The notes under the pieces were generated by a model. It was not told where the DNA came from. It made no database searches and saw nothing but the letters and a program-made list of their open reading frames with translations. From positions 1 through 64,000 of the IMG/VR virus record IMGVR_UViG_3300025536_000010: a DNA stretch of 64,000 nucleotides. The stretch is one strand, 5' to 3'. A program made the translations under genes and the position numbers. Each line of letters starts with the position of its first letter. Position 1 is the first letter of the stretch. Shown here piece after piece: positions 4,604-57,159 of the stretch.

Positions 4604-4633
4604 ACTACATACACGGCGGCCCCAGGTGCCATC

Positions 4634-5014
4634 ATGGACCGAGCTTTCAATGTCGATCCCTATGCGTGCGGGTCGTTGCCGCCGCGACCCGGACGCCTGT
4701 GCAACCCGCGCTACGACGCAGGGACAAGGCAGCACACCTTGTCCTTGCCGCCTTGCCCGCCCGGCGTAAAACGCCGGGCCGTGTTTTTCGAGGTGCGCGG
4801 CCAGGGCACCAGCACGGTGCAGGTTCGTCCCGGCCTCGACACCGTGAGCATCGCCTTGCCGCCCAACGCTTCCGTGGTGGCCTTTGTTATGCACTACGGG
4901 CCACACGGCGAGGCTGTCGCCGGTCCCTTGTCAGCCTTCCGGGCGACGACCAAGGCCCCACCAAGGCCCAAGCGCCCCAAGGTCAATCGTACTGAGGAGA
5001 GGACGCCGGCATGA
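4634..5014 (+). CDS. Hypothetical protein
   Basis: ORF coupled by ATGA overlap to next gene; basic C-terminus. Confidence 0.55.
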   Translation: MDRAFNVDPYACGSLPPRPGRLCNPRYDAGTRQHTLSLPPCPPGVKRRAVFFEVRGQGTSTVQVRPGLDTVSIALPPNASVVAFVMHYGPHGEAVAGPLSAFRATTKAPPRPKRPKVNRTEERTPA

Positions 5015-5319
5015 ACCAACCACCCTGCGACATCTGCCCGCACAGCAACAACGTCCAGCCGTGCGACCAGCCTTGCGTGTTCCTCATGGCGGTACTGCAC
5101 CTACCAGGTGGGACGCCCAAGGTCGTCACCTCGCCGCGCTACACGGTGGAGATGTCTCGCCTGGGCGAACTGGTCGACAAGATCCCCGATTTCGGCAACG
5201 ACATCGCCAACGAACTGCGCAACCAGCTGCAACTTCCGCCTGTCGCCAGTACGCTCTACGGCAAGGTGGAAATGGCCGGAGACACCAATGTCGATCAAAC
5301 CAAGCCTGAGCCAAAATAA
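5011..5319 (+). CDS. Hypothetical protein
   Basis: RBS GAGGAG, N-terminal Cys cluster CDIC..CDQPC. Confidence 0.6.
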   Translation: MNQPPCDICPHSNNVQPCDQPCVFLMAVLHLPGGTPKVVTSPRYTVEMSRLGELVDKIPDFGNDIANELRNQLQLPPVASTLYGKVEMAGDTNVDQTKPEPK

Positions 5320-20859: not shown

Positions 20860-21008
20860 GCGGGAGGACGCGCCGATGCGTCTACCAAGCCACGGAGGGC
20901 AGAGCCCGGTACGAGGCCGGTGCTCATGTGGTACGGAGATCGTCAACCTGGGCAGCAGGCGGGGCTGGTGTCCCACCTGCTGCCGGGTCCATACAGGGGA
21001 TGGAACCC

Positions 21009-21461
21009 ATGACTCGCGTGATGACACCGATAGTGAAGGAGAAGTTGTGGGGGGTGACGAGGCCGGTTGACATCAGCCCCACGCACGAACTGCACCATGC
21101 CACGATCAAGGCGGGCGGGTTCAGCAGCCAGCACTGTCACCACCGGAAGTTTAACGGCTTCTATGTCGTTTCCGGCACGTTGCTGGTACACTTCTATCGA
21201 CGTAAGGGCGACGCAACCCCTTACGACACTGGACGGGCAGAAGCTGGCAGCAGCGTCATTGCCGTCTGGGACGAATGGCACCGCTTCGAGGCGGTGACCG
21301 ACGTAGAGTTGATTGAGTGGTATTTCAACGACCACGTCGACCCCACCGACATCGAGCGTTACGACGAGGGGGGTCTGACGCCGCCCTCAGAGGACGCAAC
21401 ACAGCCATGTCCAACCTCTTCGACGTCACCGAGCAAACCAAGCAAATCGCCGAGTTCGTGA
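21009..21461 (+). CDS. Cupin-domain protein (sugar isomerase-like)
   Basis: KLWG, SSQHCHHRKFNGFYVVSGTL, EWHRFEA. Confidence 0.7.
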   Translation: MTRVMTPIVKEKLWGVTRPVDISPTHELHHATIKAGGFSSQHCHHRKFNGFYVVSGTLLVHFYRRKGDATPYDTGRAEAGSSVIAVWDEWHRFEAVTDVELIEWYFNDHVDPTDIERYDEGGLTPPSEDATQPCPTSSTSPSKPSKSPSS

Positions 21462-35535: not shown

Positions 35536-36576
35536 ATGCCAAAGATTCGCTACCGGACCTTCAAGTTCAAGCCGGAGACGCTGGAACGCATCGACAAGGT
35601 CAACCAGATCGTCCAGCAGTACGCTGCCCAGGGCATCTATCTAACCCTGCGTGGTATCTACTACCAGTTCGTCAGCCGTGACTGGTTCCCCGAGTCCTGG
35701 AAAGACCCCAAGACTGGCAGCACTAACAACGAAAAGTCGTACGACAAGCTGGGCAACATCATTGCCGATGGACGCCTGGCGGGCCTGATCGACTGGGACG
35801 GCGTCGTCGACCGCACCAGGCAGGTCCGGGAGTTGAACAGCTGGCGTAACCCGCAGACCATCGTCAAGGCTTGCTCCGAGCAGTTTCGCCTGGACAAGTG
35901 GGCCAACCAGGACCACTACATCGAAGTCTGGGTCGAGAAGGATGCTGCTTTGGGCAGCATCGAGACGGTCTGTAACGAGAACTTCGTGCCCTACATGTCG
36001 TGCCGCGGGTATGCGTCGGCTTCCGAGATTTGGACGGCCGGGCATAACCGTTTCAAGCCGCGCGTCCACAAGAAGAAGTGCCACGTTCTCTACCTGGGCG
36101 ACCACGACCCCTCCGGGTTGGACATGCCACGCGACCTCCAGGAGCGCCTGGACATGTTCACCCGCGCCCCGGGCGGCGTCAGCCTGGAACGCCTGGCCCT
36201 TAACATGGACCAGGTCGACCAGTACAACCCGCCGCCCAATCCCACGAAGATGACGGACAGCCGCGCGGCCAAGTACGTCGAGGAGTACGGGGAGACGTGC
36301 TGGGAACTGGACGCGCTGGACCCGGTTGTCATCCGCGATTTGATTCAGAATGCCATCGACCAGTATAAGGACGTGGACCGCTGGCAGGAGGCGCTAGACG
36401 AAGAGAAGGAGGCCCGAGGCCACCTTGCAAGCATTGCCAGGAACTGGGAAGATGTCGTCGACAACTTGCCCGTCGAGACACCGGACGACGATGACGTCGA
36501 GGAGCCCCAAGAAGAGGCGGAAACGGATGCCGCCGAGAAACCCAAGGACGACGAGGAAGAAGACTATTTTGCTTAG
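35536..36576 (+). CDS. Topoisomerase VI subunit A / Spo11-like winged-helix plus TOPRIM protein
   Basis: TLRGIYYQ (candidate catalytic Tyr), VWVEKD, LYLGDHDPSG, ELDAL; acidic tail; TATAAT at 35491; RBS AAAGGAG. Confidence 0.8.
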   Translation: MPKIRYRTFKFKPETLERIDKVNQIVQQYAAQGIYLTLRGIYYQFVSRDWFPESWKDPKTGSTNNEKSYDKLGNIIADGRLAGLIDWDGVVDRTRQVRELNSWRNPQTIVKACSEQFRLDKWANQDHYIEVWVEKDAALGSIETVCNENFVPYMSCRGYASASEIWTAGHNRFKPRVHKKKCHVLYLGDHDPSGLDMPRDLQERLDMFTRAPGGVSLERLALNMDQVDQYNPPPNPTKMTDSRAAKYVEEYGETCWELDALDPVVIRDLIQNAIDQYKDVDRWQEALDEEKEARGHLASIARNWEDVVDNLPVETPDDDDVEEPQEEAETDAAEKPKDDEEEDYFA

Positions 36577-37124: not shown

Positions 37125-37360
37125 TGCCGGACGACACCACCTGGATTGTGAGCAAGGAACAAAAGGAAGAAGCCGACCGGAGGACTGCGGAGTTCAACGA
37201 CCTGACCAACGCGATCTTCGCGGACCTGGCGGACCAGGAGCGCAGTAAGAAAGCCGTAGAAGCCGTAAACGAGTACACGCGCTCCCTCGTACAGCAAGAA
37301 GATCCTGAGCGGGTAAGTGGTGTCGGCCGTGAGGTAGGCCAGCCAGGGCCTGACAAGTAG
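37124..37360 (+). CDS. Hypothetical protein
   Basis: TAATG coupling. Confidence 0.6.
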   Translation: MPDDTTWIVSKEQKEEADRRTAEFNDLTNAIFADLADQERSKKAVEAVNEYTRSLVQQEDPERVSGVGREVGQPGPDK

Positions 37361-37373
37361 CTGACACGTTCCA

Positions 37374-37625
37374 CGGTCGCCGGAGAGCATACGGAGACCG
37401 CGGGTGCCGCCAGACGAAAGTGCCTCACACTCGGCACCCGGGCAACGGGAGGGGCGGATAAACGCGGTTCCTGCGGTCTGGGCTCCTTCTGCCGTGCCGC
37501 ATCCAGAACCAACCCCGCTCCCGGACAGAGGACAGGAAGTCCGGTGAAGGGTCACGGAGGACGAGAGTCACCTACACCAAACCGGGTGAACCATGCACCC
37601 GGGGGCGGCTCAGAGCCTTGGTGCT
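37374..37625 (+). ncRNA. Candidate structured RNA rich in GGA motifs (CsrB/RsmZ-like sponge?)
   Basis: Nine GGA in 37382-37561; stems GGGTGCCG/CGGCACCC, CCGGAC/GTCCGG (loop AGAGGACAGGAA), GTC-ACGGAG-GAC, CCGGGTG/CACCCGG. Confidence 0.45.
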
Positions 37626-37626
37626 G

Positions 37627-37655
37627 TTGCCTAGCCCGCTTCAATACAGTATCGT
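37627..37655 (+). promoter_or_regulatory. Sigma70-like promoter upstream of groES
   Basis: TTGCCT-N17-TATCGT. Confidence 0.5.
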
Positions 37656-37678
37656 TCGCCCATGACGATCTACTTACC

Positions 37679-37710
37679 TTCGGTGAACCCGTACAACCGG
37701 GTTCACCGAA
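37679..37710. promoter_or_regulatory. Perfect 13-bp inverted repeat in groES leader
   Basis: TTCGGTGAACCCG-TACAAC-CGGGTTCACCGAA. Confidence 0.7.
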
Positions 37711-37739
37711 TTCATCCACACACCCTGGAGGCGATGCAC

Positions 37740-38141
37740 ATGGCGAAGACGGCTACGACCACGAAAAAGACCGAGGCCCCAACCAAGGCTCCCAAGAATG
37801 CCAAGGCCCTGGCCGAGGCCCTCAACAGCGAACACCCGCTGGCCCGCTGCCACCCGCGCGGCGACCGCGTGGTCATCCGCCGCGACCTGCCCAAGAAGCA
37901 GACCGAAGGCGGCATCCTGCTGCCGGACACAGTCGCCAACGCCAAACAGCAGACCGGCCTGGTCGTCCGCGTCGGCCCCGGCCCGCTAGTCAACGGCGCG
38001 CGTGTGCCGTTGGACTTGGAACCCGGCGACCGCGTCATCATCACCGGCTACGCCGGCCTGGAACTGCGTGACCAGAACACCCGCGAAGGCGACGAGTTCT
38101 GCATGCTCCGCGAAGAGGACGTGCTGGCCAAGCTGTCCTGA
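37740..38141 (+). CDS. groES: Co-chaperonin GroES with N-terminal extension
   Basis: HPRGDRVVI, TEGGILLPD, VVRVGPG, GDRVIITGYAG, LREEDVLAKL. Confidence 0.93.
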   Translation: MAKTATTTKKTEAPTKAPKNAKALAEALNSEHPLARCHPRGDRVVIRRDLPKKQTEGGILLPDTVANAKQQTGLVVRVGPGPLVNGARVPLDLEPGDRVIITGYAGLELRDQNTREGDEFCMLREEDVLAKLS

Positions 38142-39400: not shown

Positions 39401-39970
39401 TTGATCGAAGACCTGCTCAAGACCTACGCCTACAAGACGGGCGAGTTCACCCTCGCTTCGGGACAGACGTCCGACGAGTACCTGGACGTCAAGGAAGCCA
39501 TGCACCACCCCTACGCCGCGCGCCGGCTGGTACAGTGCGTGCTGGATGAGTTCGTCGGCACCGAGATCGCCCTGGCCGGCGTGGCGGACGGCAGCATCGC
39601 CATCGCCGCCGTTGCCGTCTACGTTCGCAACTTGTACTCGCCGCAATCGTGTCACCTGCTGACAATCCTCAAGGAGCGCAAGCAACACGGCACCAAACAG
39701 CAGATCGTGGGCCTGGACAACCTCAAGGATTTCAAGAACGACTACAGGTTCGTTGGGATCATTGAGGATGTCTGGACCACGGGCGAGTCGACGGCCAAGG
39801 CGATCCGCGCAGCTCAGGCGGAAGGATTGAACGTACGCCAGTGCGTGGCCGTCGTCGACCGCGAGGCGGGCGCTGTGGCGCGGCTGACGAAAGAGTTCCC
39901 CAAGATTGTCTTCTCCGGCGTTACGACGCTCAAGGCCGTCCGCGACGGCAAGCGCTGGCATGAGGGCTAA
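39401..39970 (+). CDS. pyrE: Orotate phosphoribosyltransferase
   Basis: GEFTLASGQTSDEYLD, RKQHGTKQ, PRPP-binding IEDVWTTGES, AVVDRE; TTG start. Confidence 0.88.
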   Translation: MIEDLLKTYAYKTGEFTLASGQTSDEYLDVKEAMHHPYAARRLVQCVLDEFVGTEIALAGVADGSIAIAAVAVYVRNLYSPQSCHLLTILKERKQHGTKQQIVGLDNLKDFKNDYRFVGIIEDVWTTGESTAKAIRAAQAEGLNVRQCVAVVDREAGAVARLTKEFPKIVFSGVTTLKAVRDGKRWHEG

Positions 39971-39984
39971 AAGCCGTTTTTGAG
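39967..39984 (+). repeat. Dispersed AAAAGCC-nn-TTTT motif copy
   Basis: CTAAAAGCCGTTTTTGAG overlapping the pyrE stop. Confidence 0.7.
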
Positions 39985-39999
39985 AACACCGCTTCACAG

Positions 40000-40035
40000 A
40001 AAACCACCCTCCCTACGGAGAGGCGTGGTTTTTTT
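40000..40035 (+). terminator. Intrinsic terminator
   Basis: AAAACCAC..CTCC-CTAC-GGAG..GTGGTTTT followed by a T run. Confidence 0.7.
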
Positions 40036-40097
40036 CTTAGCTATTAGGTAGACTCGCATTTGATTCAGAGATGTCTCAAAGGCCAGGGAGGGCTACC

Positions 40098-40895
40098 ATG
40101 CCACGGCAGGCACTGTGCGTCGGCGTCAACTACGCCAACACCGAGTTCGAGCTGCGCGGCTGCGTCAACGACGCGAACGACTGGGCGCAGTTTTTCGACA
40201 AGCGCGGCTTCTCCACGTCCGTCCTGACCGAGAACCAGGCGACCCGCCAGAACATGCTCGCGGCGATGGAGAGCCTGGTGCGGCAACTGCAACCGGGTGA
40301 GATCGGGGCGATCCAGTTCAGCGGCCACGGCACCTGGCTGCCCGACCGAGACGGGGACGAACCGGATGGCCGAGACGAGGCCCTGGTGCCGCACGACGTC
40401 ACCGACGACGGCCGCGGCCTCATCATCGACGACGAGTTGCGTGTTATCTTCGGCCGGCTCCGCGAGGGCGCACGGCTCCTGTGGATCTCGGACTGCTGCC
40501 ACTCGGGTACGGCTTTCCGCTTCTTCGGCAACGGTGCCTCCAAACGCCGCGTACGCTTCTTGCCGCCGTCTCACTTCCTGGTCGATACCGGCCTGGTGCG
40601 TCGCATGGAGCGGGCCTACGGTCAACCGCCCAAGCGGACCAACGCAGCTCTACCTGGCGTTCTCCACCTTTCGGGCTGCCGCGATCACGAGTACAGCGCC
40701 GACGCCGAGATCGACGGCCGGTTCAGCGGGGCGTTATCCTACTACGCTTTGCTGGCGTTCAAGCAGGTAGTCCAGCAGAAGGGCACCTACCAGGACGTCC
40801 ACAAACTCGTCCGCCAGTACCTGCCCAGTTGGGACTTCCAGCAGACCCCGCAGCTGAATGGCGCGACGGCCTTGAAACGGACGCCGCTGTTCTAG
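40098..40895 (+). CDS. Metacaspase (peptidase C14)
   Basis: ALCVGVNY, LRGCVNDA, FSGHG (His), DGRDEALVP, SDCCHSG (Cys). Confidence 0.92.
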   Translation: MPRQALCVGVNYANTEFELRGCVNDANDWAQFFDKRGFSTSVLTENQATRQNMLAAMESLVRQLQPGEIGAIQFSGHGTWLPDRDGDEPDGRDEALVPHDVTDDGRGLIIDDELRVIFGRLREGARLLWISDCCHSGTAFRFFGNGASKRRVRFLPPSHFLVDTGLVRRMERAYGQPPKRTNAALPGVLHLSGCRDHEYSADAEIDGRFSGALSYYALLAFKQVVQQKGTYQDVHKLVRQYLPSWDFQQTPQLNGATALKRTPLF

Positions 40896-40928
40896 TACAC
40901 TCAGACCGTCTTGCCTCCTCTGTTCCAG

Positions 40929-40969
40929 CCTCGTCAGTGGGTCCGCCCCGCTGGCGAGGTTTTTCTTTG
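40929..40969 (+). terminator. Intrinsic terminator
   Basis: 13-bp stem CCTCGTCAGTGGG/CCCGCTGGCGAGG followed by TTTTTTCTTT. Confidence 0.8.
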
Positions 40970-41047
40970 CGCCGGGCTAAATAAGCGGTAGGGTTGTGTC
41001 ACAATAAATGATGGGAATCCCTACCCTTTTATCCTGGAGAGCGCTAC

Positions 41048-41296
41048 ATGCCCGGCATCCTACTCTTCGTGGCCAGCAACGATGCCCCCAAGCCTAACAG
41101 GCGCTGCAAGCGCTGCTGCTGTCAGATCGACAAGGGGCTGTTCCTGTGCCTGTCTTGTGAGGAGGTCGTGGCCTACTGGAGTCAGCTGGGCGAGTGTCCT
41201 AACTGCACAGGTCACATCAACCAGGCACGCAAAAGTAAGTTTTGCCCGCACTGCGGCGTGCCTCTGCGTAACCCCAAACCGCGGAAGAAGCAGTAA
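41048..41296 (+). CDS. Zn-ribbon protein
   Basis: Multiple CxxC pairs. Confidence 0.6.
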   Translation: MPGILLFVASNDAPKPNRRCKRCCCQIDKGLFLCLSCEEVVAYWSQLGECPNCTGHINQARKSKFCPHCGVPLRNPKPRKKQ

Positions 41297-41332
41297 CTTT
41301 TCCCTGTTCCGTGTTCCCGAAAGGAGCGGTCG

Positions 41333-42340
41333 ATGTTTGACAACATGAGGCGCGTTCTGTGCGCGACCCACGACGGCATCTTCCACGCAGATGACGTTGT
41401 GTCTTTTGCCTTGTTGACGCTGCTGCACAGGTTTCTGCCGGGCTTCCCCACGCCGCAGCTAACCCGCACCCGCGACCCGAAAGTGCTGGGCGAGCAGCAC
41501 ATCGTTTTCGACGTCGGCGGGGAATATGAAGTCGTCCGCGCGCACAACGTCTACCGTCTCGATCATCATCAGCGCGGCGGCGCCGGGTTGCGGCCTAACG
41601 GCGTACCCTACGCCGCAGCGGGGCTGATGTGGAAGACGTTCGGCCTCGAACTCTGTGGGGCAATGGCTGCGGAGCACGCCCTGTCCGTGCTGCACGACAA
41701 CGCCGTGTTCGAGAAGTTCGATCAGCAGTTCATTCAGCCGATTGACGCGAACGACTGCGGCTTCGAGATGGCCAGGGACTGGGAAGTACCGACGCTGCGC
41801 CCGCTTACGCTCAGCAGCATCATCTCTGGGTTCAACCCACGTTGGGATGAGGACATGTCGGCCGCCGAATCGCTGCGCAGGTTTGGCGCGGCAGCACAGG
41901 TGGCGCGTACGAGCATCGAACACGCGCTGGGCGGCATGCTGGCGGCGAAGAAGGCTGCGGACATCGTCCGCGACAGCGACCGCGTTTTCGCTGACAAGGT
42001 ACTGGCGCTTGGGCGTTTTTGTCCGTGGACCGAAGCCGTCCTGGAGAACGTAACCATGACCGACATCTTGTACGTCGTCTACAAACAGCCGGGCGAGGGG
42101 CAGCCGACCTGGATGGTTCAGTGCGTGCCGTGCTCGCTGGGCTCGTTCAGCAAGCGGAAGGCCCTGCCCGAGCCGTGGGCTGGGCTCCGCAGCAAGGAGG
42201 AGACGAAGGGCGACGGCCCGACCATCGAGGCCGTCAGCGGTGTCGCGGACGCCGTTTTCTGTCATCCAGGCCGCTTTATCTGCGGTGCGAAGTCCAAGGC
42301 CGGCGCTCTCAAGCTCGCTGAGATCGCGGTTATGACGTAA
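41333..42340 (+). CDS. MYG1-family (DHH-like) exonuclease
   Basis: THDGIFHADD, FDVGG, DHHQ, AAGLMWK, IDANDCG, FCHPGRF. Confidence 0.9.
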   Translation: MFDNMRRVLCATHDGIFHADDVVSFALLTLLHRFLPGFPTPQLTRTRDPKVLGEQHIVFDVGGEYEVVRAHNVYRLDHHQRGGAGLRPNGVPYAAAGLMWKTFGLELCGAMAAEHALSVLHDNAVFEKFDQQFIQPIDANDCGFEMARDWEVPTLRPLTLSSIISGFNPRWDEDMSAAESLRRFGAAAQVARTSIEHALGGMLAAKKAADIVRDSDRVFADKVLALGRFCPWTEAVLENVTMTDILYVVYKQPGEGQPTWMVQCVPCSLGSFSKRKALPEPWAGLRSKEETKGDGPTIEAVSGVADAVFCHPGRFICGAKSKAGALKLAEIAVMT

Positions 42341-46992: not shown

Positions 46993-46998
46993 TCTCCC

Positions 46999-47042
46999 AA
47001 GCCGTCGACCCGGTATGCTGGGCGGCGGCTTACTCATTTCTT
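46999..47042 (+). terminator. Probable terminator hairpin
   Basis: AAGCCGTCG/CGGCGGCTT stem followed by ACTCATTTCTT. Confidence 0.45.
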
Positions 47043-47057
47043 CGCAATCGGGTTTGC

Positions 47058-47284
47058 GTTTTGTCCCCCATTCGAGTATATTTGGCCGCAGTCCAATATC
47101 TCGACACACGCGGTACGGAAGCCTCGGTCGAGCCGCATGGCAATGAGGCTGTGCGTCGGTTGGAGCCGCTAACGAAGTCCTTTTCGGACTCAGGCCCGTT
47201 CCCGACGCTCTCTACTTCCAATGCTGCGCCTACACGGTCGCCGTGCAGGCTTTGCTCGGCTTCCGCCGCATGGGAGGACAAAGC
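47058..47284 (+). promoter_or_regulatory. Multi-stem structured leader that pairs with the RBS of the downstream GT2 gene
   Basis: GTTTTGTCCCCCA (47058-70) pairs with TGGGAGGACAAAGC (47271-84); inner stems CGGAAGCC/GGCTTCCG and GCGTCGG/CCGACGC. Confidence 0.5.
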
Positions 47285-47285
47285 A

Positions 47286-55284: not shown

Positions 55285-55290
55285 TCCGTA

Positions 55291-55320
55291 TAGACCCCCA
55301 GTTCGTAGCCCAGGTACAAT
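55291..55320 (+). promoter_or_regulatory. Sigma70-like promoter directly before structured RNA
   Basis: TAGACC-N18-TACAAT. Confidence 0.45.
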
Positions 55321-55326
55321 GCCGCT

Positions 55327-55549
55327 GTTGACTAACCGGGGCCTGCCGCTGGCGTCGGCCGGTAACGGACAGCAGCTGTTGGTCGCAAGATGTGACTGGC
55401 AGCTGGGAACGGCCCCGTGGCGAAAAGCCGGGGGCCAGGAGGAAATACCAGGCGGCACGCCACCTAGCCGCCCGGTGCCCAAACCCGCAACGGGAGAGGA
55501 TCGGTGCCCCGGCACAATGGGGAAGCTGGGGAGGCCGCGGTTAGTCGAC
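55327..55549 (+). ncRNA. Candidate multibranch structured ncRNA (about 223 nt)
   Basis: 17-nt closing stem 55327-43/55533-49; 14-bp hairpin 55373-86/55392-405 with several G-U pairs; GGCCCC/GGGGCC; GGCGGC/GCCGCC. Confidence 0.65.
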
Positions 55550-55574
55550 CCTTTCAACCACCACGGAGGGTGTC

Positions 55575-56404: not shown

Positions 56405-56959
56405 ATGTCGATCCTGGCCACACACGATGGCCCTCCCCCGTGGGCGAGGGCCATGTTCACCTTGGGGCAAGAGAAAGCCGCGGCAGTCGCGGACCCGCCC
56501 CAGGTGTCTTACGACCTTGCCGGCCAGTTGTTCCTGGCGGCCAACGGTTGGCTGCTCCTGTCCGTGCCGAACGCTTTCGTTCACGGCCTCTATGCTACCA
56601 TCGACGAGCGCGGCGTAGAGTTACCGCCAGGCAAAGACGGCGGGCCGATGAACGCGCACATCAGTGTGATGAAACCGAAAGAGATTGAGCTACTCGGCGG
56701 GGCCGACAAGATCAGCGAGCGCGGCAAGCAGTTCCACTATACGATCAGCCGCCTGTACACAGTCGAGCCGTCAGGCTGGCCGGAGATGAGCAAAGTCTGG
56801 TTTGTGCGCGTTCACTCGCCAGAGTTGCAGGAGTTGCGGAGGAGTTACGGGTTGTCGTCCCTACCCAACGACGGGAAGCATGACTTCCATATTAGCGTCG
56901 CCGTCAGAAGGAGGGGCGTCTTGGGTAGGAACGACAACCGTAAAGGCGAGGCAGCTTAG
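56405..56959 (+). CDS. 2H phosphoesterase-family protein
   Basis: Two HxS motifs (AHISV, FHISV) about 76 aa apart. Confidence 0.7.
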   Translation: MSILATHDGPPPWARAMFTLGQEKAAAVADPPQVSYDLAGQLFLAANGWLLLSVPNAFVHGLYATIDERGVELPPGKDGGPMNAHISVMKPKEIELLGGADKISERGKQFHYTISRLYTVEPSGWPEMSKVWFVRVHSPELQELRRSYGLSSLPNDGKHDFHISVAVRRRGVLGRNDNRKGEAA

Positions 56960-57159
56960 GTTAGTTGTGCAGCAGGGGTGGTTGGCGCGGTTGGTTGGTT
57001 CGCCTGGAGCTTCGCCAGGACTTCCTCCCGGTGAACGGGCACCTTCCGGGGGGCTTCGATGCCGAGGCGGACTTTGCCGCCGTCGATGTCGACAACCGTG
57101 AGGGTGATGTCGTCTCCGATGACGATCTTTTCACCTAACTTGCGAGAGAGTACCAACAT
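56956..57159 (-). CDS. csrA: Carbon storage regulator CsrA/RsmA
   Basis: MLVLSRKLGEKIVIGDDITLTVVDIDGGKVRLGIEAPRKVPVHREE; RBS AAAGGAG on minus strand. Confidence 0.96.
   Translation of the reverse strand: MLVLSRKLGEKIVIGDDITLTVVDIDGGKVRLGIEAPRKVPVHREEVLAKLQANQPTAPTTPAAQLT

What the first reader, a model, noticed from the sequence alone, without database searches (positions are those of the whole stretch)
37374..37625. GGA-rich structured intergenic RNA resembling a CsrA/RsmA sponge
Seen: about 265 nt of non-coding sequence in a genome otherwise packed with genes. It has nine GGA in 180 nt (roughly four expected at this composition), with GGA in predicted loops (AGAGGACAGGAA, ACGGAG). Established: CsrB/RsmY/RsmZ titrate CsrA through repeated loop GGAs. 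Inference: a phage sRNA that sponges host and/or phage CsrA.
Basis: partly seen in the sequence, partly recalled or inferred. Interest (0 to 1): 0.6.

Follow-up and report, generated by a model that had tools for sequence, protein, structure and literature searches.

The report
New structured RNA before phage groES
The gap holds a real, evolutionarily conserved, intricately folded RNA of about 235 bases that sits in front of the co-chaperonin gene of a small clade of uncultured giant phages and matches no known RNA family, but it is not GGA-rich beyond chance and does not look like a CsrA sponge.

Summary
The non-coding gap is real: 37361-37739, 379 nt, between a 78-aa ORF and a phage GroES gene. 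The nine GGA are there. They are not more than the local composition gives (dinucleotide shuffles 7.9 +/- 2.0, P = 0.37), and GGA is not enriched in any homologue.

The gap does hold a conserved structured RNA, window 37400-37634, + strand. I found homologues in five further lineages of related uncultured phage contigs. All lie in the same gene block, and five of the six sit directly upstream of groES.

The fold is a 5' hairpin whose loop forms a pseudoknot, followed by a four-way junction closed by a long-range helix. On the alignment, 94% of cells are paired, against 35-47% when the partners are slid. 28 of 53 pairs show compensatory changes. G-U outnumbers A-C 25 to 5, which fixes the strand.

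No Rfam 15 family matches. The RNA is present once in the 235-kb genome.

My best reading is a new cis-acting leader or intercistronic RNA of the groES operon; the mechanism is inferred, not shown. The CsrA-sponge reading is poorly supported. Only one GGAGGA element is conserved, and it lies in a helix. The phage does encode a CsrA, and that element fits the CsrA-site consensus, so binding of a single CsrA dimer is not excluded.

The parts
37400..37634 (+). Conserved structured RNA core (about 235 nt), single copy in the genome
   Evidence: Covariance model R1 hit, 202 bits, E 3.5e-51. Homologues in L034, L014/L015/L016, L011/L012/L013, L025/L024 and L023.
37402..37438 (+). P1 hairpin (GGGTGCCG / CGGCACC) with a 22-nt loop
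   Evidence: 5 of 8 pairs have compensatory changes and 100% of cells are paired. Coordinates.
37410..37415 (+). Pseudoknot strand 1: CCAGAC in the P1 loop
   Evidence: Complementary to GTCTGG at 37476-37481 in all lineages. L025 has CCAGGA with TCCTGG, two compensatory changes.
37476..37481 (+). Pseudoknot strand 2: GTCTGG in the P3b loop
37440..37448 (+). P2 closing helix, 5' strand (GGGCAACGG); it pairs with 37624-37632
   Evidence: The long-range helix has three covarying positions and four different sequence versions across lineages; 98% of cells are paired.
37624..37632 (+). P2 closing helix, 3' strand (CTGTTGCCT)
37451..37504 (+). P3/P3b arm (37451-59 with 37496-504; 37464-68 with 37491-95), with a bulged A and a large loop that carries the pseudoknot strand
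   Evidence: 9 of 13 pairs have compensatory changes.
37503..37511 (+). Junction J3/4, CCAGAACCA; nearly invariant and largely unpaired
   Evidence: Alignments A7 and A9.
37512..37552 (+). P4/P4b arm.
   Evidence: Helices covary. The loop sequence is not conserved; at least one GGA is present in five of six lineages.
37553..37565 (+). Invariant CACGGAGGACGAG. The first eight bases are the 5' strand of P5. The sequence is identical to the ribosome-binding-site variant CACGGAGG used by at least 14 genes of this phage, but no start codon follows it.
   Evidence: Identical in five of six lineages. RBS use. P5 shows no covariation.
37616..37623 (+). Invariant CCTTGGTG, the 3' strand of P5
37565..37611 (+). 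P6 (37565-73 with 37603-11) enclosing hairpin P7 (37582-88 with 37596-602). P7 is absent in L011.
   Evidence: P6: 7 of 8 pairs have compensatory changes. P7 variants CCGGGTG/CACCCGG, CAGGGTG/CACCCTG and CGGGA/TCCCG are read from alignment A7.
37361..37399 (+). 5' flank with a small hairpin (CGGTCGCCG...CGGAGACCG). The window phage lacks the GGGTGAG-N-GAGTTG motif and the longer hairpin that the other five lineages carry here.
37635..37739 (+). Spacer to groES. It holds a perfect 13-bp inverted repeat (37679-37691 / 37698-37710, 6-nt loop) and the GGAGG ribosome-binding site. It is specific to this phage; the spacer is 24-43 nt in four other lineages and 90 nt in L034.
37740..38141 (+). Phage co-chaperonin GroES (133 aa), the gene that follows the RNA
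   Evidence: Pfam Cpn10, E 3.2e-21; phrog_3188.

Best explanation
Window 37400-37634 (+) encodes a previously undescribed, compactly folded RNA.

Shown:
- It is conserved in six lineages of related uncultured large-phage contigs (the window's own genome, 235 kb, is the only complete one).
- It is transcribed-strand specific.
- The fold starts with a 5' hairpin (P1) whose loop (CCAGAC) pairs with a downstream loop (GUCUGG).
- A four-way junction (P2-P3-P4-P5) follows, closed by a 9-bp long-range helix, with a distal P6/P7 arm.
- The junction nucleotides are nearly invariant.
- One helix (P5) is invariant: its 5' strand copies the phage's own ribosome-binding-site variant CACGGAGG, and its 3' strand is the matching CCUUGGUG.

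Inferred:
- The RNA is part of the mRNA that carries groES and acts in cis as a leader or intercistronic regulatory domain.
- Its folded state is stabilised by a ligand, a protein, or the ribosome or CsrA acting on the RBS-like strand, and this sets how much of the downstream operon is expressed.

The sensing partner and the output step are not known.
For: Conservation. A covariance model finds the RNA at E 1e-33 to 1e-56 in L034, L014, L011, L025 and L023. The neighbouring GroES proteins are only 53-61% identical. The RNA is 52-77% identical in nucleotides, about as conserved as the groES coding sequence.

Structure.
- 94.4% of cells are paired, against 35-47% with slid partners.
- 28 of 53 pairs have changes on both sides, against 2-7 when slid and 11.6 +/- 2.3 when shuffled (0 of 500 shuffles reach it).
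- On the MAFFT alignment, which is not fitted to the model, 26 of 53 pairs are compensatory.
- The pseudoknot carries a double compensatory change in L025.

Strand. There are 25 G-U cells against 5 A-C cells.

Not coding. GC3 is flat, and the homologues have stops in all frames.

Cis role.
- In all six lineages the RNA lies on the gene strand just upstream of a ribosome-binding site: 24-43 nt from the start codon in four lineages, 90 nt in L034 and 105 nt here.
- In L011 and L014 only 24-28 nt are left, too few for a separate promoter, so groES must be co-transcribed with the RNA.
- Five of six lineages have groES as the next gene. In L023 one ORF (345 aa) lies between.
- No canonical promoter or + strand terminator flanks the RNA.
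- The phage's recurrent upstream motif CTAAAAGCC-N3-TTTTGAG is absent from this gap.

Phylogeny. Presence follows the GroES tree as one clade.
Against: - No expression data exist. The only sequencing run that holds the sequence is a DNA run of a subsurface metagenome.
- No expression platform was found. Thermodynamic folding gives no pairing of the CCUUGG strand with the real ribosome-binding site, even with the decoy strand blocked (three lineages computed).
- No intrinsic terminator follows the fold.
- In this window and in L034, 90-105 nt separate the RNA from groES. In L023 the next gene is not groES. So the link to groES could be mere synteny.
- All genes in these phages share one strand, so orientation says little.
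- At about 235 nt with a complex fold, the RNA could equally be a stable trans-acting RNA or a ribozyme.
- There are only six lineages, all from metagenomes.
Confidence: 0.45

Rival explanations
1. A stand-alone, stable non-coding RNA that acts in trans. It would be transcribed separately or cut out of the polycistronic transcript. It could be the RNA part of a ribonucleoprotein, or a regulator whose invariant CCUUGGUG strand pairs with the CACGGAGG ribosome-binding sites of phage mRNAs.
For: - The size and tertiary complexity are typical of large bacterial and phage ncRNAs.
- Four lineages have a U-rich run 2-3 nt after a conserved CUCAC(C) tail.
- In the window, a strong 13-bp hairpin lies between the RNA and groES.
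- In L023 the RNA is not adjacent to groES.
- CACGGAGG is the ribosome-binding site of at least 14 phage genes and is complementary to the invariant P5 3' strand.
Against: - No promoter or canonical terminator was recognised.
- In L011 and L014 groES starts 24-28 nt after the RNA, so transcription must continue through it.
- The proposed seed is buried in helix P5.
- No transcript data exist.
Confidence: 0.28
2. A CsrA-binding RNA. The RNA would bind phage or host CsrA through the conserved UCACGGAGGA element and a GGA in the P4b loop. It would either titrate CsrA or be regulated by it.
For: - The phage encodes an intact CsrA.
- UCACGGAGGA fits the published RsmE/CsrA site consensus (A/U)CANGGANG(U/A). 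That consensus is quoted from memory and was not tested here.
- Five of six lineages have at least one GGA in the P4b apical loop.
- 35 of 254 phage ribosome-binding sites carry CANGGANG.
Against: - GGA is not enriched in any homologue.
- At most two candidate sites exist, against roughly 7-22 in known sponges (from knowledge).
- The conserved site is paired in P5.
- The P4b loop GGA is absent in L014, and the conserved site is degenerate in L023.
- No Rfam Csr/Rsm family matches.
- The elaborate conserved fold is not needed for a sponge.
- The CA preference before GGAGG at phage ribosome-binding sites is mild.
- The likely host phylum, Planctomycetota, has no known Csr sRNA.
Confidence: 0.1
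3. A catalytic or processing RNA: a self-cleaving or otherwise reactive element that cuts or marks the polycistronic transcript in front of groES.
For: - Large, highly conserved pseudoknotted folds with invariant junction nucleotides are often ribozymes (general knowledge).
- The RNA sits between cistrons.
Against: - No known ribozyme family matches.
- No cleavage evidence is available.
- Nothing in the sequence points to a specific chemistry.
Confidence: 0.1
4. It is not functional as an RNA. The conservation would reflect a DNA-level site (origin, packaging or protein-binding region) or a decayed gene.
For: No transcript has been observed. In the window phage one frame is open across the whole gap.
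Against: - Compensatory changes occur in 26-28 of 53 pairs.
- G-U strongly exceeds A-C, which only makes sense for an RNA from the + strand.
- Stops occur in all frames in the five other lineages, and composition is non-coding.
Confidence: 0.04

Closest known systems
CsrB / CsrC / RsmX / RsmY / RsmZ (CsrA-titrating sRNAs)
   Same: It is a non-coding RNA in a genome that encodes CsrA. It contains a GGA-bearing element that fits the CsrA-site consensus, and in most lineages a GGA in one apical loop.
   Different: - GGA is not enriched.
- There are one or two candidate sites rather than many.
- It has a single compact pseudoknotted four-way-junction fold rather than repeated short hairpins.
- No Rfam match.
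- No independent promoter or terminator was seen.
Pseudomon-groES RNA motif (Rfam RF01721; Weinberg et al. 2010, PMC2864571)
   Same: It is a conserved structured RNA candidate in the 5' UTR of groES, presumed cis-regulatory.
   Different: That motif is reported from Pseudomonas chromosomes. The RNA here did not match it in cmscan at E up to 10. From knowledge rather than a test, that motif is also much smaller.
Large riboswitch aptamers built on a multi-helix junction plus a loop pseudoknot (for example SAM-I, cobalamin, lysine)
   Same: It has a four-way junction closed by a long-range helix, a loop-loop or loop-junction tertiary pairing, invariant junction nucleotides beside freely covarying helices, and a position just upstream of a ribosome-binding site.
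   Different: - No sequence or structure match to any of them (Rfam).
- No recognisable expression platform.
- The gene context (co-chaperonin) suggests no ligand.
Phage-borne cis-regulatory RNA motifs such as manA and wcaG of cyanophages (PMC2864571)
   Same: They are structured RNAs carried by phages in the 5' UTRs of auxiliary genes, and are known only from comparative genomics.
   Different: They are unrelated in sequence and fold, and come from different phages, hosts and downstream genes.

Membership tests
CsrA sponge sRNAs (CsrB/CsrC/RsmX/Y/Z) | Match to a curated Csr/Rsm covariance model | tested here: not met
   There were no gathering-threshold hits in the window. No Csr/Rsm hit appeared at E up to 10 in 37200-37900 or in four homologous loci.
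CsrA sponge sRNAs (CsrB/CsrC/RsmX/Y/Z) | Many GGA motifs, clearly over-represented | tested here: not met
   There are 9 GGA in 252 nt, against 7.9 +/- 2.0 in dinucleotide shuffles (P = 0.37). The homologues have 6-9 GGA, with P 0.07-0.44.
CsrA sponge sRNAs (CsrB/CsrC/RsmX/Y/Z) | GGAs displayed in the loops of repeated short hairpins or in single-stranded linkers, and conserved between homologues | tested here: not met
   Only GGAGGA (alignment columns 166-171) is shared by five of six lineages, and it lies in helix P5. One apical loop (P4b) carries a GGA in five of six lineages. The other GGAs are lineage-specific.
CsrA sponge sRNAs (CsrB/CsrC/RsmX/Y/Z) | Binds and titrates CsrA | not testable with these tools
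   This needs a gel-shift or in-vivo titration assay with the phage CsrA (window 56956-57159, minus strand).
CsrA sponge sRNAs (CsrB/CsrC/RsmX/Y/Z) | Independent transcript with its own promoter and terminator | tested here: inconclusive
   No sigma-70-like promoter or + strand intrinsic terminator was found. However, the phage has its own multisubunit RNA polymerase, whose signals are unknown. No RNA runs are available.
Cis-regulatory leader / riboswitch-like RNA | Conserved fold supported by covariation | tested here: met
   94.4% of cells are paired, and 28 of 53 pairs are compensatory against 2-7 in slid controls. On the unfitted alignment 26 of 53 are compensatory.
Cis-regulatory leader / riboswitch-like RNA | Consistent position on the sense strand just upstream of homologous genes | tested here: met
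   The RNA is directly upstream of groES in five of six lineages, and upstream of a 345-aa ORF followed by groES in the sixth. It lies 24-105 nt from the next start codon.
Cis-regulatory leader / riboswitch-like RNA | Expression platform (terminator, or alternative pairing that hides the ribosome-binding site) | tested here: inconclusive
   No terminator was found. Folding with the decoy strand blocked gave zero predicted pairing of CCUUGG with the real ribosome-binding site in the three lineages computed. The real site is mostly paired locally in the window and in L014.
Cis-regulatory leader / riboswitch-like RNA | Specific ligand or protein that changes the fold | not testable with these tools
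   This needs in-line probing or SHAPE with candidate ligands, or pull-downs.
Pseudomon-groES RNA (RF01721) | Match to the Rfam model | tested here: not met
   There was no hit at E up to 10. The family is listed in PMC2864571.

The most novel reading that the evidence does not exclude
The RNA is a new class of sensor or decoy. It is a compact phage RNA whose invariant helix hides an exact copy of the phage's own ribosome-binding-site variant (UCACGGAGGA).

When a partner opens or captures that helix, the RNA switches expression of the groES operon, or frees or titrates a translational regulator that acts on the 14 or more phage genes with the same site. The partner could be a metabolite, the phage-encoded CsrA or the 30S subunit.

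This would be a riboswitch-like or RBS-mimic timing device in a giant phage that probably infects Planctomycetota.
Probability: 0.15. Interest if true: 0.8.

Novelty: new variant of a known kind. Interest (0 to 1): 0.62.

Why it matters
Well-supported new families of large structured RNAs are rare, and most of those known turned out to be riboswitches, ribozymes or ribonucleoprotein scaffolds.

This one rests on only six lineages, yet about half of its base pairs show compensatory changes, and it has a covarying pseudoknot.

It sits in giant phages that carry their own RNA polymerase, a GroES and a CsrA, and that probably infect Planctomycetota. RNA-based regulation is almost unexplored in that host group.

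It gives a concrete, short, synthesisable object for structure probing, ligand or protein screening and reporter assays. It could also show how giant phages time chaperonin-dependent assembly.

Tried and rejected
- **Known RNA family.** Rfam 15 at gathering threshold on the whole window, and at E up to 10 on the region and on four homologous loci, gave nothing relevant.
- **tRNA or tmRNA.** None in the window or the whole genome.
- **Repeated element.** No other copy was found in the 235-kb genome by blastn, nhmmer or the covariance model.
- **Hidden gene.** Rejected on composition and on stops in the homologues.
- **GGA enrichment.** Rejected.
- **Close relatives among cultured phages.** None by DNA. 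By protein, only distant topoisomerase-like and GroES hits.
- **IMG/VR.** Two GroES-based locus searches (the single protein, then the 24-sequence alignment), one topoisomerase-like locus search and four DNA pattern scans gave only distant relatives or chance matches, all without the RNA. The pattern was mis-specified. It was corrected and checked on the held loci.
- **GTDB genomes.** One strict pattern scan gave two chance hits.
- **Searches that could not be run.**
  - The full records behind the metagenome loci are not held.
  - A phylum-wide search of Planctomycetota needs a genome handle that I could not obtain.
- **Expression.** The only holder is a DNA run of a subsurface metagenome.
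- **Simple SD / anti-SD / anti-anti-SD switch.** Not supported by partition-function folding in three lineages. The script stopped on the fourth lineage because of a motif mismatch, and I did not repeat it.
- **Outer helix.** In five lineages the conserved upstream GGUGAG could pair with the downstream CUCACC tail; in L025 it would be GAGCAGG with CCUGCUC. This is suggestive, but duplex energies are no better than shuffles.
- **Pseudoknot pair counting.** I did not hand a typed dot-bracket string to the pair-counting tool. The pseudoknot was checked by script only.

Full report
**Setting**

The window is the first 64 kb of a 234,886-bp virus record that CheckV rates complete. It comes from a subsurface metagenome.
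- It has 62% G+C, about 259 predicted genes (my own ORF caller) and 92% coding. All but four genes lie on the + strand.
- It is a tailed jumbo phage. It carries a terminase large subunit, collagen-like tail fibres, a DNA polymerase, an SbcC-like nuclease and a multisubunit RNA-polymerase beta-like gene.
- It has no tRNA or tmRNA.
- It encodes a CsrA on the minus strand at 56956-57159. The closest named CsrA relatives are from Planctomycetota at 65-84% identity. Cellular GroES relatives point the same way. A planctomycete host is therefore likely, but this is inferred.

**The observation**

The gap runs from 37361 to 37739 (379 nt). It lies between a 78-aa ORF and a GroES gene (Pfam Cpn10, E 3e-21), which is preceded by a GGAGG ribosome-binding site.

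Nine GGA lie in 37374-37625.
- Against the whole genome this looks high: the mean is 3.4 per 180 nt, and 1% of windows reach nine.
- The stretch is G- and A-rich. Dinucleotide-preserving shuffles of the same 252 nt give 7.9 +/- 2.0 (P = 0.37).

So the count is right, but the claim of enrichment is not.

**What is there**

GroES homologues of 53-67% identity led to metagenomic contigs with the same gene order: a topoisomerase-like gene, one or two small ORFs, GroES, a phosphoribosyltransferase and a caspase-like peptidase. Several of these contigs also have a 300-390-nt gap in front of GroES.

The gaps align at the nucleotide level. A profile search and then a covariance model recover six lineages at E 1e-33 to 1e-56:
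- the window
- L034
- L014 (= L016; L015 differs at two bases)
- L011 (= L012, L013)
- L025 (with the partial L024)
- L023

Six other relatives lack the RNA within the DNA I could fetch: L010, L017, L018, L019, L020 and L021. On the GroES tree the carriers form one group.

The RNA is single-copy in its genome.

Pairwise nucleotide identity of the RNA is 52-77%. That is about the same as the groES coding sequence (61-72%), while the GroES proteins are 53-61% identical. Unconstrained intergenic DNA would not be expected to stay alignable at that distance.

**Structure**

On the model-based alignment:

| Measure | Observed | Partners slid by 1-3 columns | Shuffled |
|---|---|---|---|
| Cells forming a standard pair | 94.4% | 35-47% | 82.0% |
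| Pairs (of 53) with a change on both sides | 28 | 2-7 | 11.6 +/- 2.3 |

None of 500 shuffles reaches the observed value on any measure. On the plain MAFFT alignment, which was not fitted to any structure, RNAalifold predicts the same helices, and 26 of 53 pairs are compensatory.

The fold, in window coordinates:
- **P1**, 37402-09 / 37432-38, with a 22-nt loop.
- **P2**, 37440-48 / 37624-32. This long-range helix closes a four-way junction and has four different complementary sequence versions among the lineages.
- **P3/P3b**, 37451-59 / 37496-504 and 37464-68 / 37491-95.
- **P4/P4b**, 37512-15 / 37549-52 and 37519-26 / 37539-47.
- **P5**, 37553-60 / 37616-23.
- **P6**, 37565-73 / 37603-11, where 7 of 8 pairs covary.
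- **P7**, 37582-88 / 37596-602. This hairpin is missing in L011.

The P1 loop CCAGAC (37410-15) is complementary to GUCUGG (37476-81) in the P3b loop in every lineage. In L025 both sides change together, to CCAGGA and UCCUGG, which supports a pseudoknot.

G-U pairs outnumber A-C mismatches 25 to 5, so the RNA is read from the + strand.

Junction nucleotides such as CCAGAACCA are nearly invariant, as is the internal loop ACGA / AGAG between P5 and P6.

**A notable detail**

P5 is the one helix without covariation: both strands are fixed. Its 5' strand, CACGGAGG(ACGAG), is identical to a ribosome-binding-site variant that precedes the start codon of at least 14 genes of this phage by 5-10 nt. 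The general logo is C-A-(A/C)-GGAGG. In the RNA no start codon follows it.

It suggests that this strand, or its partner CCUUGGUG, is read by something that also reads real ribosome-binding sites: the 30S subunit, CsrA, or phage mRNAs. That is inference.

**Flanks**

- Five lineages, but not the window, share an upstream GGGTGAG-N-GAGTTG motif and a covarying hairpin.
- Four lineages carry a downstream CUCAC(C) tail; in three of them (and in L025, which has a different tail) a U-rich run follows before the ribosome-binding site of the next gene.
- The next start codon is 24-43 nt from the RNA in four lineages, 90 nt in L034 and 105 nt here.
- The window's spacer contains a perfect 13-bp inverted repeat.
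- In L023 a 345-aa ORF without Pfam hits lies between the RNA and groES.
- No sigma-70-like promoter and no + strand intrinsic terminator flank the RNA in any lineage examined.
- The motif CTAAAAGCC-N3-TTTTGAG recurs upstream of a dozen genes of this phage but is absent from this gap.

With only 24-28 nt left in L011 and L014, groES there must be transcribed through the RNA.

**How it most likely works**

The best-supported reading is a cis-acting leader or intercistronic domain of the groES operon transcript. Its compact fold would be the regulated state (confidence about 0.45).
- Shown: conservation, fold, strand, position.
- Inferred: co-transcription, and any regulatory output.

I found no expression platform. 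A simple switch, in which CCUUGG alternately pairs with the decoy and with the real ribosome-binding site, is not supported by partition-function folding.

Rivals:
- A stable trans-acting RNA (0.28).
- A CsrA-binding RNA with one or two sites (0.10).
- A ribozyme or processing element (0.10).
- No RNA function (0.04); covariation and the G-U bias argue against it.

**Comparison with known systems**

No Rfam 15 family matches at any threshold tried. That includes the Csr/Rsm sRNAs, the Pseudomon-groES motif (RF01721, listed in PMC2864571), RNA thermometers, riboswitches and ribozymes.

The architecture resembles large junction-plus-pseudoknot aptamers. That is a resemblance, not membership.

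As a CsrA sponge it fails the testable defining features: GGA excess, many loop-displayed sites, conservation of those sites, and a model match.

Literature searches found no description of such an RNA.

**Limits**

- There are six lineages, all metagenomic.
- No transcript data exist.
- The full contigs of the relatives could not be searched for csrA or for distant copies.
- Host genomes could not be scanned with the model.
- The covariation test is not phylogeny-corrected. The slid-partner control keeps relatedness, however, and is far below the observed values.

**Verdict**

The locus is real and new as an RNA family. The function is open, with a cis-regulatory leader of the groES operon as the leading hypothesis.

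Noticed in passing
window 3079, 7663, 24747, 39968, 52052; beyond the window at genome 76189, 94023, 109671, 154841, 180044, 189500: A recurrent, partly palindromic intergenic motif, C-TAAAAGCC-N3-TTTTGAG(A/G), lies 20-250 nt upstream of about a dozen gene starts. It is probably a promoter or operator class of this phage, which has its own multisubunit RNA polymerase.
   Followed up: partly
window 56956-57159 (minus strand): An intact CsrA gene (67 aa) is one of only four predicted minus-strand genes. Its closest named homologues are from Planctomycetota (65-84% identity), which suggests the host phylum. The phage has no FliW.
   Followed up: partly
window 8491, 11330, 22842, 31157, 55562, 55932 and more beyond the window: At least 14 genes use the extended ribosome-binding site CACGGAGG 5-10 nt before the start codon. 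35 of 254 ribosome-binding-site regions fit CANGGANG, the CsrA-site consensus as I recall it.
   Followed up: partly
window 37679-37710: A perfect 13-bp inverted repeat with a 6-nt loop lies 30 nt upstream of the groES start. It is absent from the other lineages. It could be a terminator-like hairpin or a protein operator.
   Followed up: no
window 37361-38071: The frame of the upstream ORF stays open for 237 codons after its TAG stop, across the whole gap and into groES out of frame. This occurs only in this phage, the composition is non-coding, and it is judged to be chance.
   Followed up: yes
window 4604-5287, 20860-21406, 46993-47285, 55285-55574; genome 213680-214525, 217331-218168: There are other unusually long gaps between predicted genes, up to 846 nt. 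Those inside the window have no Rfam hit. They were not examined for conserved RNAs or for genes my caller missed.
   Followed up: no
window 39401-42340; L011, L014, L017, L018, L021, L024: The block downstream of groES is conserved: a phosphoribosyltransferase and a caspase-like peptidase (C14), plus a MYG1-family exonuclease in the window. Relatives also carry pyrimidine-synthesis genes (DHO dehydrogenase, OMP decarboxylase) nearby.
   Followed up: no
L018:1166-1777, L020:1791-2438, L021:1549-2151: Relatives that lack the RNA carry homologous ORFs of about 200 aa two genes upstream of groES. Two of them have a weak Acb2/Tad1-hairpin Pfam hit (an anti-CBASS/Thoeris sponge fold). This hints that the neighbourhood is a variable accessory region.
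   Followed up: no
locus of P0019 (no DNA available): Another GroES relative has a 415-nt gap upstream of groES on a 26-kb contig whose DNA could not be fetched. It may hold a further copy of the RNA or a different one.
   Followed up: no
window 35536-36576: A gene matching phrog_6247 ('DNA topoisomerase', E 1.6e-103) has homologues at 42-46% identity in Brevundimonas, Roseobacter, Pseudanabaena and actinobacterial phages. In L011 and L014 it appears to be split or interrupted, with an HNH endonuclease gene next to the fragments in L014.
   Followed up: no
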